A stretch of DNA of 64,000 nucleotides from Phallusia mammillata (GCA_965637545.1 OZ281496.1:25048001-25112000); one strand, 5' to 3'. Positions 1 through 53,319 are shown, counted from the first letter of the stretch. Notes: a model not told the origin generated them from the sequence alone. Numbers and translations: made by a program.

Positions 1-32
1 TGAAAGATGATGGTTCTGCTCTGTCACTTTAC

Positions 33-3000
33 CTGCTTAATCAGTGTGGTAATGTTCATTAGTTTAGAGTAGGTCGCCCACTGGTTGATCTTGTTGTAAA
101 ACGAATCCATGAAAAGGATGGGAATGTTGAAGCGAGCAATCTCTGGTCCCACAGTTTCACCCTAAAACAAAGGCAATATTTTGTCTACAATCGATAGCAC
201 AAAATAATATACCAGTTGTAGAGCATTTTTAGTTGTTTTTCAAATGTCCTACATCAACTCTATGTGTAATTTTACCTCCATCTCGTTGCAAATGCATGGC
301 ATTGTCATAGCAGTTGGTGTCGTCCTTTCTGCTTGGCAGCGAACGGTTCGGCCATTTGGCATACCTACGTTGGCGGTCATGCCCATCAAGGCGTTATTGT
401 CGTTCATTTCCATCGTCATGGTGATGTCGTATCCTCCCATCGACCAATGGAAGTGCAACGGGCGCATAGGAAGACTGTCAACCAATACAGAAGTAATGCG
501 TGGTTCAACAGGTTATGCTAAAAACTCTCAGATGGAAGTTCACAATAAATTGCCCTTTTGAACAAATAGAAAGTCATTTATCTGCTGGACTCACCGTGCT
601 GTAAAGGTCAGTGTCGATGTCATGATTGGACTTGTGCATGACAAGGTGGCAATTGATCGGTTTCGTGCGTCTCTTGTCAATCTGAGTTCAAATGTGGCCA
701 GGGGACGATCGCATCTATACAAACCAATTGATGTATTAATGCGATGAAATTTCGATTAGTCAAAGCATAAGACAGGCCTTTTTTGCCAAAATCCCTACAA
801 CTTTTTGTTTCAAAGTATTTTAAAGTGTTGACATAATAGATTACATTGACAAGGCACTACTCCTTTTAAATAAAACTTTAACGGGGACGGTTCCGTTGGT
901 ACGACTAAGATTAGTTTGACCTGAACTCTTTTAGGTGATGTAAGTGCGTTTCAAATTTCAGCTTAATACCACTGTTATAAATCTCTCTAAATTTTCTGTA
1001 TTTGATTTGAGAGGTCTTACTTAGGGCATGTAACTTCCACTCTGAATACATCGTCGTGGTTGATACTCTCCATCGAAAATCTTAGGTAGTCTTTGCTCAG
1101 ATACGTGGCAATATTACTTGTATATGGCTCAATCAAATCGTAGTAGGGCTTCATGTACAAGTTAACGCGATGCATGGCTTGGTTCACTGCAGAGATTACA
1201 AGGTTGATGTTAAATGCTTTGTTATAATAGTAGAAAATGTTCAAATAATTAAACATACCTATTTCGGGATCATAACTCTTGTTCCATCTTTCAATCAACT
1301 TGTTGTTTTCGGCACACAAGTATGAAGATAGACGGGTACATAAGTCCGGATCATTTACATGGAACCTCTGTTATTAGATAATTTGTTAGTATATCTATAA
1401 GATAAGCTTTGGCGCTGTAATATCTATGAAGCAATAAGTTAGGTCCGGCGGTGGGGTATAGCTGGTTCGCACAGGTTCTATAGATCCGTCTCATGAAATT
1501 TTATGAGATCAGCGAACCGGTTAGCATTACTGGTTACCATCAATGGACTTTTTGTAAGAGAATTGACTGAAAAATATGACTTTTGTGACAGAACCCACTG
1601 GGAAGAAAATTGAATTCCACCACTGGTTAGGTTACTTGTATAAGCTGAAAAATGAAAACGACCTAGGACTAACCGTTCGTAAGGTTTCCGCGATCCAAGT
1701 TTCGTCCAGGCAATGACTGTAATTGAATGTGAAAAGGAATCTCATGACTTTCAGCCAGTCAGCATTTGGCATGTCATATCCGATCACATAACTTGCGTCC
1801 AACCGCCATTCAGCCACAGTCACTGGTCGTGGTGGTGCCTTACCAGAAGGTGGCTGAAAAATAATATATTACCAACCACCTGATAAACAGGGCCACATAA
1901 CTTTATGTCGACTTCAACTATATACACACAACGAAACATGCGTTTTATGTAGGGTGTTAATTTAACTGTATCCGTACCTCAGTTCTGATGCAAGTAAAAG
2001 CCAAGGTGTTTTCGACCGCTGGAACTGGAGTACCGGTGCACTTGTACAGTGTATCGTTATCGGTATACGTCATCCTCACAGTTCTGACATTTGTAGTTGC
2101 GTCTGTTTCGTATCTGATGTCGACACCTTGGGCGTTGTCTGGCAGGCCCACTACCAGTTGATTCAGAAGCGCTGATCTCGGAGTCAGATTCCAGGTGCTC
2201 TTTGTCCAGCAGAATATGTTGCTAACCATCAGGTCACATGACCAGGCTTCCCTGGGTACGGTGGTTCGAATAACCACAGAAGTTATGTGGTTTAACATCG
2301 GGTACCTGAAAAAAACGTAACCAAAGAAGTTGCTTAAAATCGGCAATGCATACCAGTTGAAACACTCGAAATGGCGGAAAATGTTGATTGTTTTTAAATA
2401 TATGTTGTCTTTGTTGAAAATTTCAGAAAAAACAATTCTTTTCAAAAGCAAAGCATGGAATGCAATGGTTCCCTTAATGGACCTTGTGGTTTGATAATGC
2501 AATATACGAAGGTAAAGGAATTACCTTTCAGTTGTAATCTCCCAACGGAGTCGAACTGGGTTCATGGTGTTGTCCATAATCATTGAAACGTTGAACATCA
2601 TCACAGAAGGTACACAAACAGCACAGGATCTAACATTGAGCATCCAAGTGTCAGTCGTTGGTTTCCTGTATTCCATATCAATGTCAATGGGAAGGAACTC
2701 CCTCATTTCTCCCATCGTTTCAAGCTGGAAGAGAATGTGGTTGACCATGAGGATGCCTGGGAAGTCAGTAATGACGTGGTGTTTGATCCTGTACAATGAG
2801 ATAAGTTTCATTATGAAATAGGCTATTGCTGCCAGGCATAATGTATAACAAAGTATTGCTCATCCAGCAGTTTTATTATAAATAATCGACGTTTCGACGT
2901 CCTATACAAGATGCCTTCATCAGGATAATGACATAACTTGCAGGACAAAATTCGTATATAGCGACAAAGTTTCATTATGTTTTAATCAACTTTGTTCTAA

Positions 3001-6000
3001 AAGAAGTACAAACACATTGCAAATAACTGTTGCTTCTGTTCATGTATTTTCCATGAACTATTTGGCAGGACAAATTTATCAGTTTTATATTTACTAGTTA
3101 AGTAACAAAAACTTGCCATGTAGTTGTAATTGTGTGTTCGCTCGTAAACGCCATGGTGGCAGGTGTCCACTCCCAGTTCATTATAGTGTTCCAGTGATTG
3201 AGAGTCATGTGGTAGGAACAGGTTTCGGCTGACATAGTAAGCGTGCTGTGCATTATCAGGTTGTCGGGCATAGAAGGTCCGTTCAGTTGCATATTAGTTG
3301 TTATTGTGCAACCCATACCGGCGCAATGAACGATCATGGTCATTTGAGAATGCTCCAAGGTCAGATCAAACATGCCGTTGTCCGGAACAAACCTTTTGAG
3401 AAGTGGAATTGCGCGAAGCACAGATGTAAATGGGACGTTAACGTCAACGTTTGATAGCTGCCACGTCGTGGGAATGCAAATCACGCTAACTTCCTCCAGG
3501 CAATCGGAAAGTGTAAGATCTCCGTTTAGAATCAATTCGTTCTCTGACGTTACGACTCTTACATTGTTGCTTCCCTTTACAGACGATGGGCTGTAGATTA
3601 CTTTGAATTGTGGAATGCTTCCTAGGTTCAGCGTTGTGGAAATGATATTTGATGTGCGATCTGCGGTTGGTGTCATTCTGATCCCGACGCTTGTTCTAAG
3701 GTCAATCGGCCACATCATTTCTGAGGTAAAGTTGTAAACTCCAGTGACAGCATTTGGATTGGTGTTCCATTCGACGTCCATATGTTCTCTAAACATGTAG
3801 ATTGGTTCACAGCCGGTTGCTGTGCGGCGGAGGATACTGAAGTCCGTAAGCACTGTCCAGTGGTTATCGTTGAATGTCCACATGGCATTTGACTTCATTA
3901 GTGGGAGATCTACTGTTGCATTAAGGATCATGCGCCGTGGGTCACAAATCTGAAGTCCGAATACATCATATGTCGCCAAGCACTCTGTGGATATTAACCA
4001 ATGTTGCGTAGTCGTCCATCTGTCACCGACTTGCATTGTTGCTGTAATTTCTCTGCCCGCTATTTCATTGTTGGGTCCAAGTGTCAATGAAATGTGGTAA
4101 GGCGTCGCATGTTCTGGTGACAAAAAGTACCACCGATATACTGTCAAATCAAAGGCTCCAGTCATGATTTTTGTGGTCGGGTCTGGCGCAAAGTTCGAAC
4201 GATACCGCGTCTTGATAACAGGCACCATCTTTCCAGTGTTTGGATTGGTCATTTCTATTGCCCAGGTCAGGTTTTCTTTTATTAAGGCAGTGGAATACAA
4301 CGCATTAAAATCCATGTCCATATATATTGTAGGCATATCCAAGTGTATCAAACTGCCAACAGTGATTTCCGCACCCGGAGTTAGAGCAATTTTTACGGTT
4401 ATCATCTTTCCGGCGATGTCCCTGATGTCGATGTTCCACTCGCCGCCAATCGAAGCTTCCGCTGATCCGACAATGGTAAAGTCGCACGCACAAGGGGTTG
4501 GAGCACCACAGTTGCATGTGCGAGTTAGGCGCATGTTTTGCATGTTGAAGCCTACCAAGCGCTGATCGATGTCGCGCAGTAGCCGTACAGTCATGCCTCG
4601 GAGTCTCCAGTCATGCCGCCAGGTAGTAAACTTGACATCGCGAACTGTGAGTTGATCTTTATTTACGTCGAAGTCCGCCATTACAAGCGCGTCCCTCGTG
4701 TCTGGGTAGCTATAAATAAAAAAATAGTGAATTGTTTTGGTCAGGGACTTATGCAACAATGTAACATCTTCTGTTCTAATCAATGCAAATAGTAACCGTT
4801 TGTTATAGTTTTACTAATTGGCATTTAAAATTCCTACTGTCCGATATTGCTTAATGGATTTACTTGGGGTTTTCTATGAAATTTAAATACTTTTTTAGTT
4901 TTACCTGAACGTGAGTCTTGCTCTAGTCGAATCAACTGCCAGGGAATAGCGGAGTGATGTTAGGGCGTTGCGCAATTGCATGCTTGACATAAGGGAAGTC
5001 GAAACTCGGTACTCGTTCCGTGTGATAAAGACAATGTTGTTTATCCCACATCCTTCACAATTCGACTGAATGTCAACTTTATAAATCGACGATGGCGCAA
5101 TGTGGATATCGTTGACCAAGGACCAAACTGGACGAGCGGTTTCATCTCTTCGACCTAGAGTGATTGTCGTTGCTCCTCGGAGAAACAAGGCGGTGTTGCT
5201 CTCCCTTGGCCCAGTGGTGTAGTTCATTACGATATCTGCGGCATTAGCAAATCGCGATACAACGTCGATGCGCTCCTCATTGGTTCGGGTTGCGTCGTAA
5301 TTTGCAAACATCTCAAGTGGGCCCAAGCATGTCCAACAGGTGCGAAGTGGCAAGACAGGCGATACTAATACGTTCCAGGCGCTTCCTTCCACAAATGGCC
5401 AGGCGTTGATTGTGGCGTTGATTTTCGTCGATAAAAGTCGTGCACGATCTTCTGTGAAGATGTTTACGTTCTCAAATAAGACCAAGCTGCTACAGGCACG
5501 GTAGTTCAAACGTATGATGTTTAGTTGACTAGATGCCGGTGCGGATGGAATGTGGTCTGGAATAACTGGATTGTTTCTGCCCTTGTAGTACCTGTACTTG
5601 TACGTTATCTTTCCTATGTTCATCAGCATGTCCAGGTCAGCGGCAACGTCGGGCGAAATGCGGTAGACACAGCGCCATGAACAGGGGTCGACGATTCCTG
5701 GGAGGCGAACAGACTCACCCTCCAAGTTCATTGACCTCAGTTCCCCCTCGTAAACCAGTGAGTTGGTAAACCGCGAAGGTGAGTTGAAGGTCACTGTCAC
5801 GCGAACATTTTCGTTGGGTGCCATATTCAAACTGGTTCTAAACAGAATCAGTGGAGTCTGGACGCCAATAAGCAACTCGTTATTGGCCCATGAGCAGTTG
5901 ACATTTTTGCTGTAGAAATTGCTGGTGATTACAAAAGTGGATGGTGAAAATGTAGCTCTAATATTACAAGGGGGATTAGGATTGGTCGCACTTCCGCACA

Positions 6001-9000
6001 GTACCCTTGTACTCAGGGTGCTTTCTGCCATAGCCAATTTTAGCATCAAGAGTGGCTCGCTGCTGGCAAGGCAATTGGCGTTAATGTTCCAGTTTCTGAG
6101 GGATGACATGCGTGCAATAACAGTGGTGTTGTATATTGCTTCTCCGGTCAACGGTCTGTATCTTAAAGTGCATCTTGGAATCGACATTGACATGGTGCTA
6201 GCGTCAACAGTTGTCCTGTAGGTGCAGTCAACTTCCAAGGGAAGGTTTTTGGTTGCCATAGACACAAAGAATTCTTCGTTAAGCGTGTAGCGAACTGCAA
6301 AGTCAACTGTACCTGTGTCTAGATTCACTTCCATGCGCATTGGACTGGGTTCTACCAGCATGCTGAACTCTGTTCTTATGGGAAATAACCTAGTTGGTCG
6401 TGGAAGTTCACTCAACCAGGTCATGCGTCTCCTACTTGCTGTTTGTTCATATGTAACCGCCACGTAGTCAATAAAAACCGACGGATCGTGTTTGCCATCG
6501 ATGACAACGCTTCCTTTTCTTGAGCTGCCCGATTTAATGTAGTCCCATCCAATGAAGGAGCACCGTGTCGACCTGTACACGTTCGCCTCTTCGTGGCCAG
6601 CGTAGTACACGCTGAAGTCTGGACAGTTGTTCATCTATTAACAAAGATAAAGAACCATTAAAGGAAATCCATTTCTGAGAGGGTGATCAGCACATGTATT
6701 TTTCAAAACTATTTTGAGGTGTTTTAAATTTTATTCAGTTTTAACAGTTATAAATTTTGCGCCGCTCAAATGCATGTGAGAAGGGCAGCTATGTCATGTT
6801 TTTATGTGAAATACACATTTACTGAACTTACACAGTAAAAAAGTCTCTTACCTGCCAAAGGCTGAAGTTTCTGTACATACAGGTCTCAGAAGCAGTGCAA
6901 ATTTCTGGGAATCGAGTAACAGGGACTGGTGCTTGAGTAAACGTTCCTTCCCATAAGGAATTCCGACCGTAGCTTAATGCAACATCATAAGCAAATCCGT
7001 TTGCTGGACTATTGGGCCGGGCGGTTACGTTGATGGCGAACGGCAACTCGATCACGTCGGTCCACATTGTTAACAACGAATTGCGGAGGTTCGAGTATTT
7101 GAAGTTAAATTTGCTTCGAAGTCGATGGAGCTTGGAGCCGGCGATAATCTCGTGTCTGAGATAAGTGTCAATTACTACCAAACCCTGGTGGTTGTGAACA
7201 AGTGACATCTCGTGTAAGTAGCCGCAATCTTGAGGTGCGAATTCAGTTAATTCTGACTTTTCCAGTTCCTTAAATTTATAGCTAAAGTCAGTTGTAAATT
7301 GGGACTCCAGCAAGGGCACGCATCGTGTACACAAGATGTTAGACGTAAAAAGGACGTTATTCCACACTTTAGCAGTTGGTGTCGCCAGGTTTGCAGAAAT
7401 TTCGAATCTTCTTTCGCCCACGTAGTACATTAAATTGACATTCCACTTTTTCTCGGGGACCTGCTCCTCGAAAGACTGCAAGATTCCGAACCTTAGATTT
7501 TCGTCGGTATAGAAGTGGTTAAGAAGGTTCACAATCTTGTCTGGTAGGTAAAGGTAGGACATCACTCCTCGGTTTATGTTCACGTCCATTTGCCAGTTAA
7601 AGATTCGAGCCTCCGAATCTAATAGACGGCTGTTTATGCGTAAGTTCGGTAGGTTGACATCAAGATGATGGCACTTTGCGCATCGGTTTGGTTTTAGAGT
7701 TAGATAAGCGTAGTATGAAAGGCTTGCAGGCAGTGACCAACGCAGTATAGGATGTCGCGATGCCGTTGTAGTTATATCCATTTTGAAGTAGGTCTCATCG
7801 TCCACGGTCTTGCAAGCTGATATTGCTAAGGTAACACAAGTGGGGTTGTACTCGGTATTTGTGTCCAAGATTCTCACCTCATTTTGCACGTTGCTCTCCA
7901 TTAAGGTATTGGGAAACATTTTTTCCGGGACAACGTATCTGGTGGTGGTGATAAGAGTTGTTGTGTTGGGCGACGTTATATCAATTTGCGTTTGCCATAT
8001 ATTGCAAGTAAGTGTAGCCTTCAGTGCAACTGAACTTGGAGCGCTTCTGGCAATGTCGTAGCGAAGGTTAACGAAGGGAACTGGTCGACCGTCACGGCGC
8101 AAGGCTTCAGCATGAAGAATGTTGTTACAATTTCCGGCAGTGTCGTTAACAGATCTGTAGTGCATGTTGATTTGGGTGAAAGGTACCATCGGGATGTTTA
8201 GAGAATCCACGGTTGCCTCCGTTAGGTATCCGCTCATTGTGCCATCAGTGACAGGCTTTGTTTTGATACTGAAGTGGCCTACTGATGGTCCTGGCGTTTC
8301 CAATAGCCCCTTGTTTAACTAAACAATAAAGCTTATTTAGGATTTAAAGTTTAATAATGTGGGTTGTTAATACGGAAAGACACAATTTTCTACTGTTTTC
8401 ACTCTTTTAACGAAATATTTAACTATTCATTAACGCTTGTTTACATGTCATTAAAAGAGGTTAAAAATCAAACTTGTTTCACAAGGGGTTGGTAATCTTT
8501 TGCATAAACTTTAAATTTGCTTTCTCCAACCATTATGGTTTTTTTTAATTTTCAGAGCTGTGGAACCTTCGGCGGTTCAAACGAGCCCAGGTTAGAGAGT
8601 GCTCTAATATGTTTTAAGATATACTTTTAATGTGCAACTGACGAGTTATGTGAGGTTACCTGTACTCTAGCAGTGTAGCTGGACAAACTACTGGATTCGC
8701 TCTTGACCAAACCTTTTGCTGAGTAGTATCCTATTACCGGGAATTGGAATTTCCCAGTAACTGTGTAGGTGGTAGCTTCAGCTGTGTGCTGTAAATATAT
8801 CAGAATTCAACAAAAGGTTTGCGTTGTCGCAGGGTTTATAGTGAAGCAAACAGTTTTTTGGTTATGCCACGAACGTTGGAGACTGTAGTTATACTGATAA
8901 AACTAAATTCTAGTCATTTATTTCGACAAAATCGTGGAACCGGTTTGTATAAATTGCATTAAGGGTTTTGTACTTAAACTCAATGTTGGTGAAAGATCTA

Positions 9001-12000
9001 GCTTATCATAGGACGATTACAGGACAAATGACTAAAAAATGTCGTGGTGAATACGGAGAAACCTTGCACTCGCAATATGTCCGTTACAGTAATCTTAGTT
9101 CATGCCATACTTACGTGTGAAAAGTAACGGAAGAGTTCCAAAAAGTTGTTGTCCGGTGTAGATTGACGAGCAATCTTAAGCTCATTGTTGTACACGATGC
9201 TGCCATCTGGCCTTGTCACTTTTGCAACAGCAAGGTAGTAATCAAGTGGGCTATCGTTTACTTCTTCATCTACAAGCTGAACGGCCGACTTCAGGCTCAC
9301 TATCCAAGGTTGTCCACTGGAAAATGCGTATTCCCAGCGAACTTCGGACAGGGTTGGGATATATTTAACTGCCATCTTCAGACCATCGGCTATATCTTCC
9401 TCAGTTGGGTTGATGCTTCTTCCAAACTGAAATCACAACGTTCAGCTACTAAGTGCCAAAAAAGAAATGTATTTACCCAAAACAGTTCAACAAAGGCCTT
9501 TTGTCAAAGGAAATATGGCCATAGGAACAGATTTCAGGGTTTTGAAGATTCTAACGAGAAACAAACCATCAAATACATGCTTGGTTTTTTAATTCACTTC
9601 ATTTGAAAATGACACAAGTCGTCATGTTCTATACGGCCACTTTAGTTGTATTGCAAATTCAGATTAGCTGATAACTGATACATTAGATGTGTGGGGGGCC
9701 ACAAAGCCTTTTACCAAATAAATAATAATGTAGTAATTATGAATGAAGTATAAATGTGTCCAAAGCCCTGCTGGCTGTTGGTGTAAAAAAAACTTACCAC
9801 AAATTCCATTCCTTTGCTTTCCACGTTTTGTTCGTTTATGACTGTGTTGAGAAGTCCTGTGGCGATTCTCATCTTGTAGTAATAGCGCTGGTCACTTCGA
9901 AGGTAGAGACCGATGTCCATTGGGTTATTGTAACAGTTCTGCAAAACATGGATTTCTTTATATTCCCATTCTACTGTAAGTTTGAGTTGAATTCAGTTTA
10001 TTTCGCCTGATAAAAGCACATATCATATAGCGTGTCACAATGTCACCCAACGATCACCAAGCCGGAAATACTGGCGCAAAAATGTGAATTGGTGGATCAT
10101 GACCAAGCGCGCTGCCGCTACACCGTAATTTCATGCGATAGAAGCCTCAAAAGCATGGTAAGTTATTTACTTCCTCAAAATGCCGAACTTTTCCGATCGG
10201 TTTTGGGTTTGGGCTTAAGTTGGAATAAAACAGACTTGATTAGGATCTGACTTCGTACTCGGTCTCTTTTGTTTCGCAATTTTACCAGCTTTTGTGTATA
10301 ATTGTGCTTTCTGGTTTCGGTCAAGTTTAGGCACCAATTTCAAACCTTCTTGATACTCTGCTTTTGCTGCTATGTTATTGCACAACTTAAGGGATTTTAA
10401 CCGACATTTTGTAATCGCGTATCGCACTAATTACCTTGTACTGAAGATATGTGCCCCTGTTACAGTTACTGGAAAGGCAAGTTTCTGCACATTCACTGGC
10501 CCTTGGAATCACCTTTAAAACACCGTTCTTCACCGCCATTATGTTGGATCTGCAAACAAGATAAAACAAATCCAAAAGCAAACAAATGTTTTTTAAATAA
10601 CATGTCGATTTAAAGCAATGTTTGTTTCAATCTTTCAACAATTTGAATCATATTATATTTTCAATTTTGAAATGGTGGTCGTACTTACGTAATGCTTAGA
10701 AGTTCAGTAGACGCATGCAATGGTGCAACGTTAACCGACACCTGATTTGGTTCCACGTCGATGCTCACGCTGATGTCACTGCTATGGCCCGCGTTAAGCA
10801 AGTACCCAGCACCACAGGTTGCGCCTCCAGGGAATTGAATTTTGTGGCTCCATTCCATACTAGATCGTATGCTAAAAAACAAAGAGGCATAAATACTTGT
10901 ACATTTACACTACGGTTTATGTTGTTGAAAGCGTTTAATAGTCTTTGTTTGTAATGATAATAACGAAAGGCTGTTCTGCGGTTTCTTGGGCTTATGAAAT
11001 GGTGAGATTATAACAACGTAGGTAACACAAAATCTGGAATTATTGTCAGAATTTAAGACCTTTAGGCGGGTCCGAGGTTACTGCTTGTTTGAAATCAAAT
11101 AATCTGTACTCACAGTGGTTTGGCCTGAACAGACAAGGTGCCCCGGTTGTAAAGGAAGATGTTCCGAATTTGTGCAGTTACGCTTGAACGGAGATTGTAG
11201 TAGTAAGTAAGACTCGTGCTTTGTACATGCGGTAAGCCAATCGAAGTGGGAGAAGCAATGTCCATTCGCAAAGGTTCGTTGGCCTCCAAACTCCGATAGC
11301 TTTTGCCACTTTCAAACTCTTGCGATAGCTATAAAAAATCCATCAGTTTTTACTTTGCGACACGACTACCATTAAGCTACATTCCATCACTAACGACATC
11401 TTTAAAAGAAAGCAACAATTTCTGGTTTTAAACAAAATGAAGTGTTTGCTTTTTCGACTAAACTAGATAAGGCAAATTTAACTCAATGAAAATCTTTACT
11501 TCTCACAGTTAAAATATATTTTTTGAAATAATGTTGCGACAGTATTTTTCATGTTTTAGACACCTGTCATGTTTTTCATGGCTTTAAGTACTGTAAAAAA
11601 GGATACGCACCCTTACAGTGTAATTTTACAATCTAACGTTTGTTTGCACTGTTATCCAGGGTTATTTATGTAGTTATCCAGGGTTTATTTATGGGTTGCT
11701 GCCTAATGGGATGTCTTTTAAGCTTGTAATAGAGTAAATATTACACACAGCCTACCGTCCATAATTTCATGAGATTCATCTTACGAAGCCAGGGCATCTC
11801 AATCAGCCTGTTGAGGTCGATCTCCTTGTTCAGAAGTTTGACGTAGACTGGCATGCTACTTTGCATTTTCAGCATGTTGAACGCGACGTATGCCTGAAAC
11901 AACAACAAAAATCAACAACAAGTTTTATGTGTTCTAACTCTCGTTAATAACGTCAGAAAGGTATATTGACATTAGAAAATCCTTTTTTGAGCTTGAGTGT

Positions 12001-15000
12001 TTTCCTACAGGACAGTTGTTTTGCATTATTTTATAAATTTTGTGGGTTTTAATTTGTCTCGGTCGTCGTGCTGGCCTGTAAATGAATTACTGGCCTTTTG
12101 ACTAAAGTGAACAAAATGGTAACGCCTTAAAAAAGTTACTAGTTGGCGCAGTGTTAGCTTTTGCGCAGTGTAAGGAATTGTGTGATATGCAATTAGATGA
12201 AAAAGATACGTTGTCTGCGTAAAATATTCGGTTTCGGCGAAACCAACTCTTTGTAAAGATCTTTGGTTCAGTCAAATAATTTCGTTAAACTGACGTTTCG
12301 GTACATCACTACCCGTACCTCATCTTGGATTTGGGCTAAGTTGCGTAGCTCTTCTTCAGTGAGTGGGGGTAGAGCGCTGGTGGCACTGTCCATAAGCTGG
12401 TAGAACGGCAAGTTGAGCAGTTGTTCGAGTCTAGGTTCAGCGAAGATTCCTTTGCTTCCGAGCAATGGCCGAACGAGAGAAAGCATGTTGTTCAAATCTG
12501 CTGTCAACTCCATAAGTGTGATGTTTCTTGAATCCCACTGCAAATAGTTGCAATTTGACTGGGGGTGCGGAAATTTGATTCTTATCTAGGTATATTACAT
12601 TACAATGATTTTTGAAAAGGTGGTAATTGGTCTATTTTGTAAACCATTGTTGTTGGTTGTGTATGTTTAGCTACTTTTTGTTTGCTACTATCGAGGTAGA
12701 GCAAATGATGTTGTTTTTGGCATATGCAAACGTATGCCTTTAATACAGACAATCTACATAATCAGTTTGGTTACGAAATCTTTGAAAACACGGGTAAAAC
12801 GTATTTTTACCTCACCAACCATCTTAAGGGAAGCCTGAGTATCTTTGTGGCGTTAAAAGAGCGATGCCAGTTTTTCACAAAAAAACGAAATCGCTTACCT
12901 CTCCCATGATTGCAACGTCCGCCAACAGTGGGAAAATGCTATTTTGTGGGAAAACAACATGGGATTTCACGTAGAAATTGACTTCCCGCTCGAGGTACGG
13001 CACGAAGATTGATCTTGCAAAATTGTACTCTTTTTCCGTGACTGGTGTCACTTCGTTGTAAAGGTCGATTTCCGCCCAGTTGTTTCGTCTAAGCGACTTC
13101 ATAACTATATCCGCGAAACTGAGAACCATAACATACAAAAACTTACAGCTAATATTATGAACTGTTACCTGGTTCATTCGATATTAATCGGGAAAACGAT
13201 TTTAACTGTGTTTACGTGGTCGATTCATGAAACAAATTTGTTCATGCTTGCATTGTAAATCTTAGTTCACGTAATCTTATTTAATTTTTGTGCAATTTAA
13301 TGGCCATATGAGACAAAGAAGTTGGTTTAAACCTGACTGGTGCGACTGCCATATATACTTATTTATTTTATTGCTTATGCAAAATTCAGTATTATTACCA
13401 GTTCTTGGAGCCGCAAACCGTAGCAAAACCCAAGTTAAATGCGACAGCTATGTCGGGTATATACCATATCAAATTATCGGGCCCTGACCTGTTAACACGA
13501 AAGGTCGTGTATAACAAACTTTATTTTGACCTTAGATTTAGCCGAAAGTCATACCTTTCGCTAAGCACGCAATAACGAGTTCCTCTGTACTGGATCTGTG
13601 CTTTAATATGTTCCTTCACGTAGTGTTTCACTGCTTTTGGTGTAGGGTCCAAACTGACTACATTATGAAAGATTTATGTTTGGTACTGTTTTCGTAGTTA
13701 GTGATTAGTAAAACTTTGTAAGGCCTATATGAAAATGCGTTTTATTCAGAAAATCAAATGTTCTTACCAATGTTGGCAATGCTTCGGAATTCCGCTTCTG
13801 TTGGGTTGTTGTTGATCAAATATGCGTAACACGACAAACGCAGTGTTACCAGGCGGCTGTTGTCGGTGAAAATCGACAAAATCTTCGTCCGCATCTGGTT
13901 TCATACAAGTATTTAAATTACGCAATTTTAGTATATCTTAAATGGTGAAACTAACGGCCCAAATAGACGTAAAAAGCGATATTCTGTATATTCATTATAA
14001 CGTTTCGGAAAATGCTCATGCCATCATCAGTGATATCAAGGTGGCTTACACCTCCTTCTGCGCATCTTTTATTCTATCGTTTTAAAGCATGACGTTTTTC
14101 GGGTCGTTATTTTTACGTCTATTTGGGTCGTTATTTTCACCGTTATACTTATGAACAGATTAGTATAACTGTGTTTGGATTTTTAATTAGACACCTAAAC
14201 ATGTTCGGAAACAACTACTGCTGTAGACTAGGGCTTCACAAACTGGGGTGCGCGATCCTTACATGGTCCCACTGAAAGTTTTGGGGTCGTGGTTACTTTG
14301 ATTTAACTTAATAAAAAGTCATTTGAAGGTGATTTTTCTAACTTTCAGCAAGCACATTAAAAAACTGATGAAAAAAATCCTAAAGTAGCAGTGTAGCATG
14401 CAACTGGCAGTATATGTTACCATAGGGGCATCAGCTAAAACGTTTGTGAAGCTGTAGATCATATTTGGTAATCAGTGAATTTAGTAGCAAAACTTTTAGC
14501 TTTATTTGTAGCAATATATATTCGCTGTAGTACGAATTTTAATATTAAACTCACCGCCGGCTCAACAGGAACGTTTTTCAGCGATCTGACAGCTTCCAGT
14601 GCCACAGTAACCGGTGCATGCACATTGTACGCGCAGTTGACAAAAATGGCTCCGTTTAGTCCAGCGTTTGTGGGAAGGGCGCTTAATGATTTTATGGCCG
14701 CCAACATGATGAGTTCATGTTCTGTAAAGTAGACTTGTGTTACTTTTTTAAACATAATTCTTTGACATAAATTGACTGATTCTCTGTAGAGATTTTATCG
14801 TCCGGTTTTACTGTTTTATCGTAAAAAGAGGCAAACACTGATCTTCAGTTTAAGCCTTGCTGTTGATGGTTTTGATCCATAACTGAAGCTATAGTTGGAT
14901 CATTTTAATCACAAGTAGTTTTAATATGTTGTCAAGTCAGACTTGACGTAGAGCCTTTTATCGTTAAACTTATGTAAAACATTAATAACTAATTATGCCT

Positions 15001-18000
15001 ACAGATCTATTCAATTAGAATTTATTACTTGCTCAACTTAAGAAACCCCTTTTTCAAACCAATAACTGAGGTATATGTGTTGTATTTGTGGCTGATAATG
15101 TGCAACATTGATTTTCTAGCTTAAATTATAATTGCAACTATAAAAAGACGTTTTAGTGCGAATTCATACCGTTGTAAGTGATTGAAATTGAACAGTCGGT
15201 GTTCAGAAGGGTTTTAAGGTAGTTGATTGCTTCGATGGTCTGAGGTTCGAGCGTATCCAATTCACACGTATCCATGTGTCGAGCAAGGACTTTTCCGAGA
15301 GTCAATACCCTCAATGGTGTGGTGCGCTGAGTTGCGAAGTACTGCAAAGGGTTTTGGTGGTTAAGTCTCTTTGAAATTAATCGAAGCGTTGTGACGTACA
15401 CTGTTTTCCTGATGTAATAAGCTTTAAGACATAATTATGGTAAGGCATGACTTTTTTTCCTTCTCAGGTAAGCCCCTGTGAAGAAGCTCATAATGATAAG
15501 TTGGCCTTGAGGGCAGTAACAATTCTTATTCTGAGTAAATTGCTTGTAAACGGTTAATTTCTGATTTTGTTTTCTATACCTTAAAGTGCAAAATGAAACT
15601 TACGTGTGCGGCGGCAACCATGTTAACATTTGGTTTCTCAAACGTCGTCATTGCTTTCATCACTCCGCTTTCAATTTCCACTGCGTCGGTTGTTAAGTCA
15701 ATGTTGCGTAGGAAACGATGGAAACCGTTCTGGCAAGCAAGTGCTTCTTGGCAAGTCGGTAGGTGGCAGCGAAGAGACACAATGCTGCACCTGTAGAGAA
15801 GCTGCACCCACAAAATCCTGCGTTCAAAACAGCAGGTGTGTTATTTAGAGTGCCTAACTTCACAGCGCGAGCAACTAAGTCTTACGTGAGAGTTTCACGT
15901 TGTTCTCCGGTATAGGCATTAGAAACGTTTTCCCACAAGGACCACATGCCATGGTTCGGTAGTGTAGATATGTACTGAGCAAGTTTTGCGAATTTACCGG
16001 CCGTAAACGGACCGTTAGGTGTCGTGATGAGATCTCGCACTACAGCCACGGGGTCAAAGTTCACGAATAACCCGTCGATCGTTTCCTTCCATTGCGCCTC
16101 GTACATAACCGAGTGTCGTTCGTATCGCGCCTTGATTTGGTCTCTTTCCACTGAGATAAAAAATATTTGAGTAATTAAACAAAGCAAATTGTTACCGAAA
16201 TGCTTTTGGTCATTTGCAGACATGTTAAAATGCTTTAACACTATATTTATTTTTTTATTTGCGCTACTGCGTGCATATTAATAGGAAACATGTAGCTTAA
16301 AGATAAGTGCCATTTTTGTACACTAAGTCCTAACTGTAAAACCATGTTCTATACTTTAAACCAAACAGCACATGCGTTCGCGCAAGATTGATATCCAATC
16401 TCATACACTTACCTGATGTGATTCGATCGCTGGGTTCCATTCTCTCGTCCGCCAATCTGTTCATGTTCAACTGAACTCTTGCCTTCGCATTCGCAGTGTT
16501 TCCGTACAGTAAGTCGCTTAGAGCCTGTCATATACAGTAGCATCGTGATGTAACAAAGTATACAAACCCTTGACAAATTAATTCAGCGCAGAGTTGTAAG
16601 CCGGACTGGGCCTTTCGGGCCGGGTTTGGGTTTAGGTTTCTTTAAATTTAAAACAAGGGGCTTGATATGGGCCTGACTGTGTCAGTATTTAAAAAAACAG
16701 CTTAGTAGCCAGTTGCTGGACCTGACCTAATGTCAAAAACTCTACATCGCCTTGTTTAAGACCAATGGTCCATCATTGTATATGCGGTTTGTTGTCTTGG
16801 TTCTTCTGGGGCTTTACTTCTAACGCCTGTCAATCAAACTTTCGGGCCTAAACTCGATTTGATTCGGGACGGGTTTCAGGCGTGTACTTTCGGGTTCGGG
16901 CTCCAATTTCAGGCTCCAATTTTTTTGACATAATTATACAAGTTCTAACAACAGGCTAAAACGTTTTCCTATGCCTGAACCATGATCAAAAACGTGGCGA
17001 TCCATTTTATATAGGTTCAAATGGAACGCGTTCAAATTGCACTTGACTAGCCCTATTTCGCAACTTATAAGTTTGAGTTTGCAAACAAAGGGTATACGTA
17101 CCTTGAAGTAGGGATTGTTGGTTAAGAATACCGGTTTGGTTTCGACACAACGCACTTCTTCAACCAGTCGTCCTCTCTCCAACATGTAGCTGCATTCTTG
17201 TACTGGCGGCTTTTCCAATTTGTGCGCCACACTCACTACCTGCAAAAGTATCAAACGCCTCATATCGAAAATTTGTTAATATCGATTATTTGTTTAGTTT
17301 AGCGACTAAATTAATTATGCGCTGGACATGATTAGGTTTTTGGTTACATACACCGAATCAAAAATATTCGTATTTCTTATGGTCATACTGAACCACTTTA
17401 TTTATTGAGGTTAAAACCATTTCAGTTACTTTTATCTGGGTTCGCCTCCGTGTGATGATGGTTATTAGAATGTAGTTTACCAAAGTAAGACTTGGATTAA
17501 TGTTTTAGGGGTCTGGAGTGTTAGCAAAAATTTACGAACCACTGCTTTACATTAACAGACGTCCGTCATGTAGAATCACAAGTATTAACTTTATCAAACG
17601 TAAACTTGTTTTAACGCACCAAGTCGCTTGCTATGGCCCTTAAATCAGAATTTTCATTGGTGGTATGAATCTCTCCATATTCTTTGATGCTCCACGGGTG
17701 TTTGAAGTTAGTTGTGTCTCTTGTTACCGTCACTTGACGTGGTGCACCGACCGCTACTGTGCTGATTCGAGCGCTGACGTTGCCGATTCCAAAGATGTTT
17801 TCCTCTTCATACTAAAAATAACACGAAATGTTTTGGATATAAGTCAAGTGGGGGGTTGAATTGTGCAGTAAAACATTGGGCGATAAAGTGTAGTTGCGTT
17901 TAAGGGTTAATACAGGGGTGCGCAACCTTTTTGCTCCTTATTTCACCGACGGCCGCAAATTGCTTTTCGATCCTTATTTCACTGACGGCCACCAATTGCT

Positions 18001-20980
18001 TGCTTGTTTTTGGGTCAAAAAAAAATTATCGTCTATATACGCCATCCATTGGCGCCAAAAAAGCCCAGATTAATTTCTAATTTATACACAGATTTAGCTA
18101 AATAGCCTGGTGATCAGTCGTAACTGTGTATGACGTCATAATCTATATTGTGACGCTTGTGGTACCTTTTTTTCACATTGTTTGCACATAGTAAGCGTGC
18201 AAAAAGTCTGACGCTTTTGGCTACTAAGCTGAAAGTGCTCTTTCCAGTCCCACAAAATTTGTTTAGAGCAATTTAAAAATATTTAGCAAAAGGGCTTTTT
18301 ACGTCACGGCCGCCAGTACGTGTATTTGTAAACATGTTCACGGCCGCACAAACTCGTCTCGTCGGCCGCATGTGACCGTACGACCGCAGGTTGTGCACCC
18401 CTGGATTAATGTATTATCTTGCAGTCTCATAGCTTTCATAAATTATACATTATTTATCGAAATAGTAATAATACGTGTTTTTTTTCAACTGTTTAAATTA
18501 CATGGACGCTAAGCGTTGCTTGTTTGAGCATGATGTTGGTGAGTTTTTAGGGCACAACTTTTACGTTGAGTATAGGTCTTGCCTAAATTCGTTTTTCACG
18601 GGCCTGGTCATATTGAGACGTTAAATTTTTGTGTGAAAGTAAGGGATCTTCATATAAAGGAGGGCAAAAGCTGACTTATGTAGCGTTTCTTTTGATTGAT
18701 GTTTTACCTCCACTGGTGCGTTGAGTCCAGCCACCCTAAGAGCAGAGAAGTTGATCTGAAGAACCGAAAGCGCCGCTTTTTTGATGTTGAGAATATCCGA
18801 CGGTTCGGAGTTATCAGCAAACACTTTGGTTATCTGCAAACGATCAAATTGATTTGTTCTGTCACAGAAAGTCAAAAGCAATAGCACATAGATTAGTACA
18901 CCTAGTATTTGTCATTACATCTTCAATCAGAAGCTTTTAATACTTCAATAATTAAAAAATGGATTCTGTACCAACATTCAGCAATTTTAAACCCGAAAAA
19001 GGGGATTATAGATTTCGATTTGATAAATTGAAAGGAAGAAAGTTTAATTTAATCTTACCCTTCCATCAACAAAATGGAAATACACGCTATTCTGTCTCAT
19101 CAGCTTAGCGACATTGTCAAGCGGCGACGGGTTGGTGTAGACCAGGGTACCATTCGGAAAGGGAGTCCCCCCAAAAACATGACAATGTTTAAAGGACATT
19201 GTCCCCGCACATTGGTAGGGTATCTTGATCTCCACAGAACACCTAGGTATGTTACACAATACCGTTTATTGTTTTTCGGGCAGATTTTCATTGCATAATA
19301 ACAGACGCGTCGACGTCCCGTACGAGGCGCCTTCATCAGAATAATTGCGTGCGGTAAAACACAACACAATTGTTTATGCAGCATGCCTGGCAGCAGCAGC
19401 TTATTCATAGTGATTAGTATCATTTAGAAACGATAAAGGACATTAAGGTGCATTTTGGCAAACGTTTTACAAATTCATTTCAAAATAACATATACGGGCC
19501 TTAATCTCTCGTTGTTTAAGAACTCAAAATTGACGCGCACACAAATAAACTTTTTGGTGTAGCCTACTTGTTAGAATTTTTTTTCATTTATGTCAAATTT
19601 TATGGAAAACAATACTATTTAAAGTTTGAGCTGTATGAATCGTATTTAGACGTTTTCGTTGTTTTTTGCAATTGACACTCACAAAGGGCATCATTTTTTA
19701 TTTGCGTTTTTACATTTTTTGGCGCTAATTTGGAAAAAAACGTATTCGGCGCTCATCCAATTCTGTTACTTGCATATTCTATTCGGGGTACGAATGCTGG
19801 AAAAAAATCAACTACTCCCTAATTAGGTAATATGCTAAACGCCATATTGACTCACCGTTTCGAAAATTACACCATTGAAAAGTACACAAATACTTCATCC
19901 CATATTTACGTTTCCTATATTGATGTAATACTTGCTTTAATATGCGCGGTTTAAAAAAAGTTTGTTATTGGTTTGTCCCGAAGCTAAAAAACATGTGCCG
20001 CTTTTTAAATTTCGGTTTAAAATATTTATTTCAAAAGTAGTTTACCTTAACAGTGCACCGTTTCGAATTTCATGTTGTTGACTTTCAATGATTCCTTCAT
20101 ACTGGTAAGTGTACTTTCTTGCGATAATGAAACTCTGTACCGCTAAAACATAAAATAAAAACTTGAAAATGGTAAAATAACGGCAAATTATAACACCCAC
20201 TTCTTAAACCACACAACTTACGTTTGCATTGTGGAAAGTCAAAAAAGTCTTCTTTGATTTCTGAAAGTAGAGGATCACGTATTTTTATATGTTACGAACT
20301 TCCACAAACCAGTCTTTACATGGCGAGGCATTTTTTAAATGCGTAAAATAGCAGTTAATTCTGGGCCACAGTACGCCTGCCCCAGGCCCATTGAAGGCGC
20401 GACACCGAATCAGTCGGTCACCGAGCATTCACCACCATACGGCAAGGCGTAGGCTAGAAAAATCTAGCCTGCGATGGGATTCGAACCCACGACAGGAGCC
20501 TTTCCGGACTCGCGCTCTACTAATTGAGCTACGCGGGCTCAGTGGAGAATCCGCCGAAAGTTGTTGAAAAAGTTGAATCACAAGCACCGTATGTTCATCC
20601 TAACTAATTCTGGGCCAGGTTGTTTTAGTTAGGTTTAATGTATTTTAAAAAAATCCCTATTTATAATTTTTAAACACAAAATTTGGTTTATTCAAGTGCC
20701 ATAAGTGCCATTGAGAACGAAATAGTTATTATTACAAAATGCGTAGTATTTTTAGCAAGAAAGAACTGTTGTTATTGCTTATATGAAACATCAAAAAATA
20801 TCCATAGTAACTAGCTGTTTTGGTAATTCATGGCGAACAAGCGATTTCTTGTACGGGCAAAATGCGATGCACTAATTTGTATGTAGCCTACTCACGTGCT
20901 ACTGGCTCCTCCAATTGCGCCTCAGTTGCCACAAAACAGATGAGCATCAAAAGCAGCAGGGCAAATGCCTGTCGCCCCAT
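33..20980 (-). CDS. Apolipoprotein B-like / apolipophorin-vitellogenin family large lipid transfer protein (LLTP); 3' end lies beyond the left edge
   Basis: Phase-consistent exon chain (5' to 3' on minus): 20980-20896, 20142-20046, 19242-19059, 18833-18708, 17811-17620, 17239-17102, 16524-16413, 16150-15886, 15790-15604, 15341-15170, 14721-14555, 13894-13768, 13657-13555, 13118-12899, 12537-12319, 11893-11756, 11328-11114, 10871-10689, 10549-10435, 10385-10259, 9973-9798, 9426-9115, 8788-8660, 8309-6852, 6634-4905, 4709-3117, 2788-2525, 2305-1978, 1853-1674, 1367-1021, 714-595, 474-276, 161-33 (10,137 nt, no stop). Exon 1 encodes a signal peptide, MGRQAFALLLLMLICFVATEA. Motifs collinear with the apoB N-terminal lipovitellin-like module as I recall it: RKYTYQYEG, CSVEIKIPYQC, EPSDILNIKK, QECSYMLE..VEEVRCVE, EAINYLKTLLNTDC, LRLSCYAYL...PT, VKHYVKEHI, VKSHVVFPQNSIFP, ITLMELTADL..LLGSKGIF, SPTSIGLP. 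A few junctions (10259, 1674/1367) have alternative solutions. Confidence 0.9.
13943..14142. mobile_element. Small MITE-like inverted-repeat element in an LLTP intron
   Basis: GGTGAAACTAACGGCCCAAATAGACGTAAAAA (~13944) is the reverse complement of TTTTTACGTCTATTTGGGTCGTTATTTTCACC (~14110-14141), 32 bp with 2 mismatches. No TSD resolved. Confidence 0.65.
16589..16920. mobile_element. hAT-type MITE family A (CAGAGTTGTAA TIR), right end truncated
   Basis: Shares the left TIR and internal blocks (AGTAGCCAGTTGCTGGACCTGACCTAATG; GCCTGTCAATCAAACTTTCGGGCCTAAA; CGGGTTCGGGCTCCAATTT) with the copies at 54280 and 56584. Confidence 0.8.
17913..18403. mobile_element. hAT (Buster/Charlie-like) MITE
   Basis: TIRs CAGGGGTGCGCAACCT / AGGTTGTGCACCCCTG; degenerate 8-bp TSD GGTTAATA / GATTAATG; short internal tandem duplication near 17936-18000. 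Confidence 0.8.
20369..20603 (-). mobile_element. tRNA-containing interspersed repeat, copy 1 (SINE-like), in LLTP intron 1
   Basis: Flanked by the direct repeat TAATTCTGGGCCA (20356-20368 and 20604-20616). Contains a tRNA-like sequence at 20467-20538. Homologous over ~200 bp to 49913-50124. Confidence 0.8.
20467..20538 (-). pseudogene. tRNA-like sequence (tRNA-Lys-like head), not a canonical tRNA
   Basis: GCCCGCGTAGCTCAATTAGTAGAGCG...GTCGTGGGTTCGAATCCCATCGCAGGC has A-box and B-box, a D arm and a T arm. The acceptor stem has a mismatch and the anticodon loop (CGGAAA) is non-canonical with no U33. Confidence 0.7.
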
Positions 20981-52035: not shown

Positions 52036-53319
52036 CTTCTGTCGTGCTCTCGACTTCGCCGTCCTTCCTCGTGCAGCCGCCACGAATGCAAGTCTGATGC
52101 CAAAGCATTTCATCCTCAAAAAACGTGCAATGAAAATAGTACTTAACCGCGCGACCTAGCGTTATTGATTGTCCTGACTTTGGTCACTGTTGGTTTGATT
52201 AATTGATTTGGCTTGCAAAGTTTCGATTTTTGGGTAACTTCTCATTGTGTTGGGAAAAAGTTAACCTGGGTTGTGTATACACTCATTTTTTTATGCCTAC
52301 AATAGAGTTTTTACCGTTAGGTGGTGCCGGTATTTGAGTTTATATTTGGTATCGACATTTGTTTAATCCCACACCTGATTTGATGCCATTTTGAATCGGG
52401 TTTATTTTTTACCTATTTATTGTGACTTGTTTATGGGGCAATATTGCATCCTTGTTAAAACTAACGGGAATTAAACGAAGCGTCTTTTATATCTTCAAGG
52501 GGGAGATCGAATGGTTATTTTGGATAAATCGAAAGGTGTTTTTACGTCGATCGGATGGTGTTTTTTAGGTAATGCAAATTCTACACGTGATTGAAGGACT
52601 TAAAACGCTTCCCGCAGACGTTTTCGCCTTTTTTACAGACGTTTTTTCGCTTCTTTCTAACAATACACACCATTCATTGTTCTGAACTCTAAATTTATTG
52701 ATCGTGAAAATAACGTATTTATATATTTTAAAACTCGTATTCATATGAATGATGCGTATCCAGTTATAAAGGGTAACATCAAAAGGTCGCGTACACGCTG
52801 TTGTTGGTCGATGACGTCGGTTGACCTCATCAAACACATACTACAATTATGATGACGCAGCCATAAATCTTAAAACGGTTGTGACGATTAGATAGCATTG
52901 AGAAATGCTAGGCTGCCACCTGAAGTTTATCAACGTGATCTCATGAATTATCCCCTCGTAGAGATCATTCCTCAAGCGTTTGTGACGGGCTCTTGGCTCA
53001 TTTCCTTTTCTGGTTATTTTTGAAACCTATACCTTACGATGCAAATCGGATGTGAGGTGTTGTATCACTTGGGCGGCGCAGCACGCGAGAACATCAGAAA
53101 CTAGTGCACTTTATTTTGTGAAAAGAAAACTCTGTGTTTTAACTTTTAAGATGCATGTTAGGTTTTTTATTGCAAATGTTATACTTTTCGGTTTTGCGGA
53201 GAAGCGGTTGCCAGATTTTAAAAGTAGTTGCACTGCCGTTCTGTTTTAGACTGCTTAATAAGATTGGTTTTTTTAGACCACTTAGTTGTATTAAATTAGG
53301 ACCTTTCTTTCACGCTGCA

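What the first reader, a model, noticed from the sequence alone, without database searches (positions are those of the whole stretch)
33..20980. Giant apoB-100-like lipid transport protein in a probable invertebrate chordate
Seen: 33 exons join in phase into at least 3,379 codons with a signal peptide and no stop before the window edge. Established: LLTPs (apoB, apolipophorin, vitellogenin, MTP) share an N-terminal beta-barrel/helical/DUF1943 module; human apoB is 4,563 aa with a long amphipathic extension. Inference: my recalled motif matches fit apoB, including residue spacing, and the long extension resembles the apoB-100 belt. This would be a full-size apoB-type lipoprotein scaffold, relevant to when LDL-type particles or yolk lipoproteins arose in chordates.
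Basis: partly seen in the sequence, partly recalled or inferred. Interest (0 to 1): 0.72.

Follow-up and report, generated by a model that had tools for sequence, protein, structure and literature searches.

The report
Sea squirt giant yolk-type lipid carrier gene
This is a real, expressed sea-squirt gene for a roughly 4,000-residue secreted fat-carrying protein, but it matches the giant "vitellogenin / ApoB-like" protein already described in other sea squirts, so it is a solid annotation and not a new kind of thing.

Summary
On the minus strand, an ATG at 20980 opens a signal peptide. RNA-derived contigs confirm seven consecutive introns linking the N-terminal exons to three giant exons, and show about 2.7 kb more transcript beyond the edge. 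Most exons have collinear counterparts in three other unidentified genomes.

Exon 4 hits Pfam Vitellogenin_N at the same profile position in three species. Its profile finds only human apoB-100 among solved structures. Other large-lipid-transfer motifs are visible in order against a published alignment. The roughly 2,000-residue extension has strong amphipathic beta periodicity and folds as a long beta meander, but has no sequence similarity to the apoB belt.

By eye it shares family-specific motifs, at matching positions, with the published 3,999-residue Halocynthia roretzi "vitellogenin". That protein ends in a von Willebrand D domain that apoB lacks.

The parts
20896..20980 (-). Exon 1: start codon and signal peptide (28 codons plus 1 nt)
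   Evidence: Translation MGRQAFALLLLMLICFVATEA.. and a GT donor
20046..20142 (-). Exon 2: LLT motif N1 (..ARKYTYQYEG..)
   Evidence: Reading the sequence. The published N1 alignment has human apoB FKHLRKYTYNYE. There are weak matches in species B and D.
19059..19242 (-). Exon 3: Cys-containing beta-barrel segment
   Evidence: 38% identical over its full length to L006:3774-3956. It resembles H. roretzi vitellogenin residues 72-100 by eye.
18708..18833 (-). Exon 4: LLT motif N2 (..SEPSDILNIKKAALSVLQ..)
   Evidence: Pfam Vitellogenin_N profile positions 92-123, E 0.001. The orthologous exons score E 4.6e-5 and 0.046. The exon profile hits only apoB-100 residues 146-164, E 0.002.
8660..17811 (-). 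Exons 5-22: rest of the N-terminal module, up to about residue 1,233. Motifs N8 and N11-N16 lie in the exons at 15817-15604, 14721-14555, 13894-13768 and 13657-13555.
   Evidence: Collinear exon matches in species B, C and D. Motifs compared by eye with the published alignments and with H. roretzi vitellogenin. RNA joints confirm 10689|10549..10435|9938..9798|9426..9115|8788..8660.
6852..8318 (-). Giant exon (489 codons): start of the amphipathic beta extension
   Evidence: Both boundaries are confirmed by RNA joints. It has three distant relatives. AF2 gives pLDDT 62 and about 28 long strands. Beta periodicity is seen. A conserved C-x2-C-H motif is also present in H. roretzi vitellogenin near residue 1404.
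4905..6634 (-). Giant exon (576 codons): beta extension
   Evidence: Both boundaries are confirmed by RNA joints, and one 8,694-nt contig spans it. Orthologous exons are found in species B, C and D. Beta periodicity z is up to +3.7.
3150..4709 (-). Giant exon (about 519 codons): beta extension. The donor at 3150 is not RNA-verified; 3113 is the alternative.
   Evidence: The acceptor is confirmed by an RNA joint. There is a full-length match to L007. AF2 gives pLDDT 53, mostly strands.
1..2788 (-). Exons 26-34: about 490 further codons, with the frame still open at base 1. The exons at 2788-2525, 2305-1978, 1853-1674 and 474-276 have cross-species support. The rest are model only.
   Evidence: The X1 transcript contig continues about 2.7 kb beyond the window edge.

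Best explanation
Window 1-20980 (minus strand) holds the first roughly 3,300 of about 4,000 codons of the sea squirt's giant secreted large lipid transfer protein. It is the counterpart of the protein published as 'vitellogenin' in Halocynthia roretzi (3,999 aa, 453.5 kDa). It is probably also the counterpart of the 'ApoB-like/vitellogenin-like' protein of Ciona.

Build:
- a signal peptide;
- an N-terminal lipid-transfer module of about 1,200 residues, encoded by 22 small exons;
- an amphipathic beta-sheet extension of about 2,000 residues, encoded mainly by three giant exons;
- the start of a different C-terminal region.

By analogy with its relatives, a von Willebrand D domain and a CT region lie beyond the left edge of the window.

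Inferred mechanism: the module nucleates a lipid pocket during translation into the ER, probably with MTP. The beta sheets then lay their hydrophobic face on a growing neutral-lipid core, as the apoB belt and apolipophorin do. The particle is secreted from the digestive gland and delivers lipid and yolk to oocytes. C-terminal fragments end up on the egg coat.

Shown here: gene structure, splicing, expression, signal peptide, LLT motifs, beta character of the extension, and kinship with the ascidian family. Inferred: lipid loading, tissue, and the C-terminal domains.
For: - Gene model and open frame.
- Spliced RNA contigs join the N-terminal exons to the giant exons and run about 2.7 kb further. 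This fits 3,999 minus 3,307 residues plus a UTR.
- Collinear exons at 20-64% identity in three other genomes.
- Vitellogenin_N hits for exon 4 in three species at the same profile positions.
- The only solved-structure hit of the exon-4 profile is apoB-100 residues 146-164.
- Motifs N1, N2, N8 and N11-N16 appear in order against the published LLT alignment.
- Amphipathic beta periodicity in the extension, z +5 to +7, with helix periodicity depleted.
- AF2 models of two giant exons are nearly all long antiparallel strands.
- Structural matches are lipid-facing beta sheets, including apoB-100 residues 2845-3400 at Z 10.8. Among the Foldseek rows listed, apoB-100 has the best TM-score.
- H. roretzi vitellogenin shares, at like positions, the MFEE.WEE motif, the four-Cys motif, the RL.C / K..I.E..Q....RGT.YC stretch and C-x2-C-H.
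- Literature on the ascidian proteins.
Against: - No whole-domain Pfam hit above the curated threshold. Only one exon of about 22 is recognised by profile methods. Four other exon profiles found no LLTP among solved structures.
- The match to H. roretzi vitellogenin was made by eye from a paper supplement, not computed.
- The C-terminal domains are outside the window. The vWD-like exon in species D was not confirmed by Pfam or by the solved-structure search.
- The AF2 models have middling to low confidence, and their top structural matches are generic beta barrels.
- Ciona is said to have both an 'ApoB' and a 'vitellogenin'. Which of the two this gene corresponds to is not settled.
Confidence: 0.85

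Rival explanations
1. It is a strict orthologue of vertebrate apoB: a single-chain LDL/VLDL-type scaffold without a vWD domain.
For: The exon-4 profile hits apoB-100 only. Motifs N1 (RKYTY.YE), N2 (EP..ILNIK) and the Cys in N8 resemble apoB rows more than Vtg rows. No furin site is present. The layout of small exons followed by giant exons recalls human APOB, but that comparison rests on my own knowledge and was not tested. The total size is about 4,000 aa.
Against: Its published relative carries a vWD plus CT at the C-terminus, and species D has a vWD-like exon downstream. There is no sequence similarity to the apoB belt. DUF1081 was not detected. No helix-rich alpha2-type block lies within the 3,300 residues seen. 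The motif evidence rests on a few dozen residues.
Confidence: 0.12
2. It is a true member of the vitellogenin clade that has independently acquired a long beta-rich insertion. The apoB-like look would then be convergent.
For: The family is named vitellogenin in H. roretzi and serves eggs and the egg coat. It has a C-terminal vWD as Vtg does. N12 and N13 are slightly closer to Vtg rows by eye.
Against: There is no polyserine tract. The RL(A/S).Y motif in N14 and motifs N1/N2 are of the APO type. The architecture (LLT module, long extension, C-terminal vWD) is that of apolipophorin-II/I and apolipocrustacein. Lipovitellin and honey-bee Vg are in the solved-structure library and were not hit.
Confidence: 0.2
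3. It is two adjacent genes, or a decayed gene, wrongly read as one long frame.
For: Several 3' small exons are model only.
Against: Overlapping RNA contigs join the exons from 10871 down to 4600 and beyond. There is no stop in 3,307 codons. The same exon order is seen in three other genomes. The H. roretzi protein is one 3,999-aa chain.
Confidence: 0.03

Closest known systems
Halocynthia roretzi 'vitellogenin' (gene model S367.g04226, 3,999 aa, 453.5 kDa; Akasaka et al. 2010/2013; sequence in PMC11673157 Fig. S5)
   Same: The size fits: 3,307 codons plus about 2.7 kb more transcript. Both have a signal peptide. The shared motifs lie at matching positions: N2 near residue 140, MFEE.WEE near 330, a four-Cys motif near 410, RL.C...P and K..I.E...Q....RGT.YC near 600-660, and C-x2-C-H near 1,400-1,450. 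All comparisons were by eye.
   Different: Overall identity is low, roughly 20-25% in the stretches compared. The vWD and CT parts cannot be compared because they lie outside the window. No computed alignment was made.
Ciona 'ApoB-like / vitellogenin-like' major vitelline-coat and egg protein (PMC9265791; PMC5550911)
   Same: Both are ascidian giant LLTPs, and earlier notes call this genome a Ciona-type sea squirt.
   Different: No Ciona sequence was available here. Ciona is reported to have both an ApoB and a vitellogenin, so the one-to-one assignment is open.
Vertebrate apolipoprotein B-100
   Same: Both are secreted and share N-terminal LLT motifs and their spacing. Both have a very long amphipathic beta extension, are a single chain without a furin site, and are about 4,000 or more residues long.
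   Different: There is no sequence similarity in the belt. No helix-rich alpha2 block was seen. The ascidian family ends in a vWD plus CT, which apoB lacks. DUF1081 was not detected.
Insect apolipophorin-II/I and decapod apolipocrustacein (APO family, PMC1783640)
   Same: The architecture is the same: an LLT module, a long extension, a C-terminal vWD (inferred here from relatives), and no polyserine. The N14 motif is of the RI/L-A-S/A-Y-L type.
   Different: The conserved RX(K/R)R cleavage site between N19 and N20 is absent from the model. DUF1081 was not detected per exon. The extension is longer.

Membership tests
[quoted passage not shown] | N-terminal LLT module recognised by Pfam Vitellogenin_N (PF01347) above its curated threshold | tested here: inconclusive
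   Only exon-by-exon scans were possible. Exon 4 hits profile positions 92-123 at 18.2 bits, and its orthologues score 22.6 and 12.7 bits, against a cut-off of 24. About 20 other exon pieces gave no hit. The scan of the joined protein was left out.
[quoted passage not shown] | Conserved motifs N1-N22 in order (Babin et al. 1999; alignment in PMC1783640 Additional file 2) | tested here: met
   By eye, N1 (exon 2), N2 (exon 4), N8 (exon 9), N11/N12 (exon 11), N13-N15 (exon 12) and N16 (exon 13) are present in order, with spacing close to apoB. N17-N22 were not examined. The check was visual, not statistical.
APO family (apoB, apoLp-II/I, apoCr) | DUF1081 domain (PF06448) after the LLT module, at residues 957-1072 in human apoB | tested here: inconclusive
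   No hit at E up to 10 for the exons covering residues about 940-1,230, in the window or in species B and D. The domain would be split over 3-4 short exons, so a miss is weak evidence.
APO family (apoB, apoLp-II/I, apoCr) | Long amphipathic beta-sheet region following the LLT module | tested here: met
   The hydrophobic moment at 150-180 degrees has z +5 to +7 over 2,185 residues. AF2 models are strand meanders. The match to apoB-100 residues 2845-3400 has Z 10.8 but is not specific.
apoLp-II/I and apoCr | Furin-type RX(K/R)R cleavage site between motifs N19 and N20 | tested here: not met
   There is no R-x-[KR]-R anywhere in the 3,315-codon model.
apoLp-II/I, apoCr, vitellogenin, ascidian vitellogenin | von Willebrand D domain near the C-terminus | not testable with these tools
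   The C-terminal 700 or so codons lie beyond base 1. H. roretzi vitellogenin has the domain. Species D has an exon resembling its start (L009:6856-7092), but Pfam and the solved-structure search did not confirm it.
Vertebrate apolipoprotein B | Sequence homology across the beta1/alpha2/beta2 regions, and no vWD | tested here: not met
   Giant exons and a 5-sequence profile found no apoB chain among solved structures. The exhaustive library search found only three unnamed relatives.
Classical vitellogenin | Polyserine/phosvitin tract and a length of 1,300-2,600 aa | tested here: not met
   The maximum is 10 Ser in any 50 residues. The protein has at least 3,307 residues.
Ascidian giant 'vitellogenin / ApoB-like' LLTP | Family-specific motifs shared with H. 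roretzi S367.g04226 at matching positions, and a length of about 4,000 aa | tested here: met
   Five landmark motifs were matched by eye. The inferred length is about 4,000 aa.

The most novel reading that the evidence does not exclude
The ascidian 'vitellogenin' is phylogenetically the chordate pre-apoB. It would be an APO-family protein with an apoB-like N-terminus, an uncleaved chain and a belt encoded by giant exons as in APOB, that still keeps the ancestral vWD/CT tail and an egg-provisioning role. Vertebrate apoB would then derive from a yolk or egg-coat lipoprotein by losing that tail.
Probability: 0.3. Interest if true: 0.5.

Novelty: new member of a known kind. Interest (0 to 1): 0.27.

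Why it matters
It gives a well-supported gene model, partly verified by RNA, for the largest lipid-carrier gene of this sea squirt. It shows that the ascidian protein published as vitellogenin has an apoB-style build: a lipid-transfer module followed by about 2,000 residues of amphipathic beta sheet. This is useful for annotation and for a proper phylogeny of apoB, apolipophorin and vitellogenin. It does not change what is known: giant ApoB-like/vitellogenin proteins of ascidians, and pre-vertebrate relatives of apoB, are already in the literature.

Tried and rejected
- Pfam scans of single exons and open stretches from the window and species B, C and D gave only the exon-4 Vitellogenin_N hits.
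- Solved-structure sequence searches with the giant exons, exon 4 alone, profiles of five exons and the species-D vWD-like exon gave one hit, the exon-4 profile to apoB-100.
- The word-index protein search with the 577-aa exon was blank, as expected from its length window.
- The exhaustive representative search with the first giant exon found only three unnamed ORF-type relatives and no named LLTP.
- An exact look-up of the window's 577-aa exon found nothing on record, so the left-adjacent DNA could not be fetched.
- Foldseek on the exon model found nothing significant.
- The first two dynamic-programming gene models missed real exons and inserted spurious 9-38 nt exons. They were replaced after adding conservation and RNA constraints.
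- Internal repeats in the protein: none by self-BLAST.
- Paralogous exons elsewhere in the window: none.
- The idea of a second giant LLTP in this genome could not be checked from earlier notes.

Full report
**Observation.** The feature is a minus-strand gene. An ATG at 20980 opens a classic signal peptide.

A first pass of stop-to-stop stretches showed three very long open exons, at 8318-6831, 6634-4904 and 4810-3101, and many short ones. I built a splice-aware model locally with codon log-odds trained on the long exons and generic GT/AG weights. Conservation and RNA constraints were added later.

After removing one spurious 27-nt exon, the model has 34 exons, the last a 20-nt stub at the edge. 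It has 3,307 codons, only GT-AG introns, no stop, and the frame is still open at base 1.

The joined model was built and used only inside local scripts, for phase, composition, periodicity and motif checks. It was not sent to any search or folding tool.

**Expression and continuity.** Four runs of one study hold 30-77% of the sampled words of 3101-9430. This is about what exons alone would give. Two genomic runs hold 100%.

Contigs of X1-X3 laid on 4600-10599 skip six intervals: 4710-4904, 6635-6851, 8319-8659, 8789-9114, 9427-9797 and 9939-10434. All are GT..AG on the minus strand, and none is skipped in DNA run X6. A loose end at 10549 continues with the reverse complement of the exon ending at 10689.

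They also corrected three of my exon boundaries.

One X1 contig of 8,694 nt has 5,637 nt lying 3' of position 4600. The window holds only about 2,900 nt of exon there. The transcript therefore runs about 2.7 kb past the window edge.

**Relatives.** The word search was blank. The exhaustive search with the first giant exon found only three unnamed proteins of 486-561 aa at 21-24% identity. These are single-exon ORF calls on contigs of unidentified eukaryotes.

Local tblastn showed that nearly all modelled exons have collinear, mostly end-to-end matches of 20-64% identity in these three genomes. Species B is L005/L006, species C is L008, and species D is L001-L004, L007 and L009.

The gene and its exon structure are thus conserved, while the sequence evolves fast.

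**What it is: the N-terminus.** Exon by exon, Pfam recognises only exon 4. It hits Vitellogenin_N profile positions about 92-123 in the window (E 0.001), species C (E 4.6e-5) and species B (E 0.046).

A profile of the three exon-4 sequences finds one thing among 177,635 solved-structure sequences: human apoB-100 residues 146-164, E 0.002. Lipovitellin, honey-bee vitellogenin and MTP are in that library and were not hit. Four other exon profiles found no LLTP.

I compared the exons by eye with the published alignment of LLT motifs (PMC1783640, Additional file 2). Six exons carry motifs in the right order and spacing:

| Motif | Exon | Sequence seen |
|---|---|---|
| N1 | 2 | RKYTYQYEG |
| N2 | 4 | SEPSDILNIKK..S.L |
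| N8 | 9 | Q.L..C |
| N11/N12 | 11 | not written out |
| N13-N15 | 12 | ..RL.CY..L....P |
| N16 | 13 | VK.YV.EHI |

N1, N2, the N8 cysteine and the N14 tyrosine look more like apoB/APO rows than vertebrate Vtg rows. N12 and N13 lean the other way. This is too little for a clade call.

**What it is: the extension.** From about residue 1,234 on, no Pfam family and no solved-structure sequence matches, even with a five-sequence profile.

The hydrophobic moment is strongly enriched at 150-180 degrees per residue, z +5 to +7 against shuffles. It is depleted at 100 degrees. This is the signature of amphipathic strands, not helices.

AF2 on the first giant exon gives about 28 strands of 10-13 residues in an up-and-down meander (pLDDT 62, pTM 0.42). 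The third giant exon gives the same picture with less confidence (pLDDT 53).

Foldseek finds nothing significant. Among the rows listed, apoB-100 (9e9r) has the highest TM-score and probability. VIA-align ranks lipid-facing beta barrels first (Z about 13, rmsd about 20 A). The apoB-100 belt fragment 2845-3400 follows at Z 10.8 with 303 aligned residues.

The extension is therefore belt-like in kind, but homology with the apoB belt is not shown.

There is no furin-type site, no polyserine tract and no internal repeat.

**Placement in the literature.** Ciona is reported to have three LLTPs: ApoB, vitellogenin and MTTP (PMC5550911). The most abundant Ciona egg-coat protein is 'ApoB-like or vitellogenin-like' (PMC9265791).

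H. roretzi 'vitellogenin' is a 453.5-kDa LLTP with a long liver-type mRNA. Its C-terminal vWD and CT fragments sit on the egg coat and bind sperm proteases.

Its full 3,999-aa sequence is printed in a supplement. By eye it shares with the window gene family-specific landmarks at like positions:

| Landmark | Window | H. roretzi |
|---|---|---|
| N2 region | about 129-150 | about 141-160 |
| MFEE.WEE motif | about 325 | about 330 |
| four-Cys motif | about 402-435 | about 404-440 |
| TKIL..F...RL.C and K..I.E...Q....RGT.YC | 585-660 | 590-664 |
| C-x2-C-H (invariant in my alignment) | about 1,450 | about 1,404 |

3,999 minus 3,307 residues plus a UTR fits the 2.7 kb of transcript beyond the edge.

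In species D, exons about 5 and 8 kb downstream resemble the start of the H. roretzi vWD and its CT. The latter gives a weak Pfam VWA hit (E 3.5e-4). The vWD-like exon was not confirmed by Pfam or by the solved-structure search.

I did not compute an alignment with the published sequence, because it has no reference here.

**Verdict.** This is a real, expressed gene: a member of the ascidian giant LLTP family already described as vitellogenin or ApoB-like. Its build is apoB- or apolipophorin-like: an LLT module plus a long amphipathic beta region.

It is unproven as a statement of orthology, and it overstates the novelty.

Noticed in passing
window 48836-51173, minus strand: This is an alpha-tubulin-like gene. 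An N-terminal exon begins [17 protein letters not shown] (50871-51173), and another exon hits Pfam Tubulin_C at E 2e-32 (48836-49288).
   Followed up: partly
L009:4119-4499 (-) and L009:6856-7092 (-), species D: Downstream of the orthologous gene, one exon resembles the start of the H. roretzi vitellogenin vWD domain. Another resembles its CT region and gives a weak Pfam VWA hit (E 3.5e-4). The egg-coat 'CT' fragment of ascidian vitellogenin may therefore be VWA-like.
   Followed up: partly
window 27668-27980, 33170-33476, 29113-29645: Two different 157-bp units are each present as two tandem copies (90-93% matches). A 286-bp unit is present in 1.9 copies. All lie in the gene-poor stretch upstream of the LLTP gene.
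   Followed up: no
window 53155-54219, plus strand: A 354-codon ATG ORF has no Pfam match. It is the longest open frame outside the LLTP gene.
   Followed up: partly
window 3150-8318 compared with L001, L005, L007, L008: The three giant exons keep their number and order in four genomes but are only 20-25% identical. Some small N-terminal exons reach 45-64%. In species B and C the middle giant exon is about 840 codons, against 576 here and 428-540 in species D.
   Followed up: partly
L007 (ENA ERZ27241789 contig k141_374628): The stored gene coordinates for this locus do not translate to the listed products; for example, 1211-2368 contains stops. The table seems offset from the DNA, so ORFs had to be re-listed.
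   Followed up: yes
window 10049-10131: A second contig of DNA run X6 matches only two 22-24-nt pieces here, with 68 other letters between them. This is probably a short repeat shared with another locus, inside an intron.
   Followed up: no
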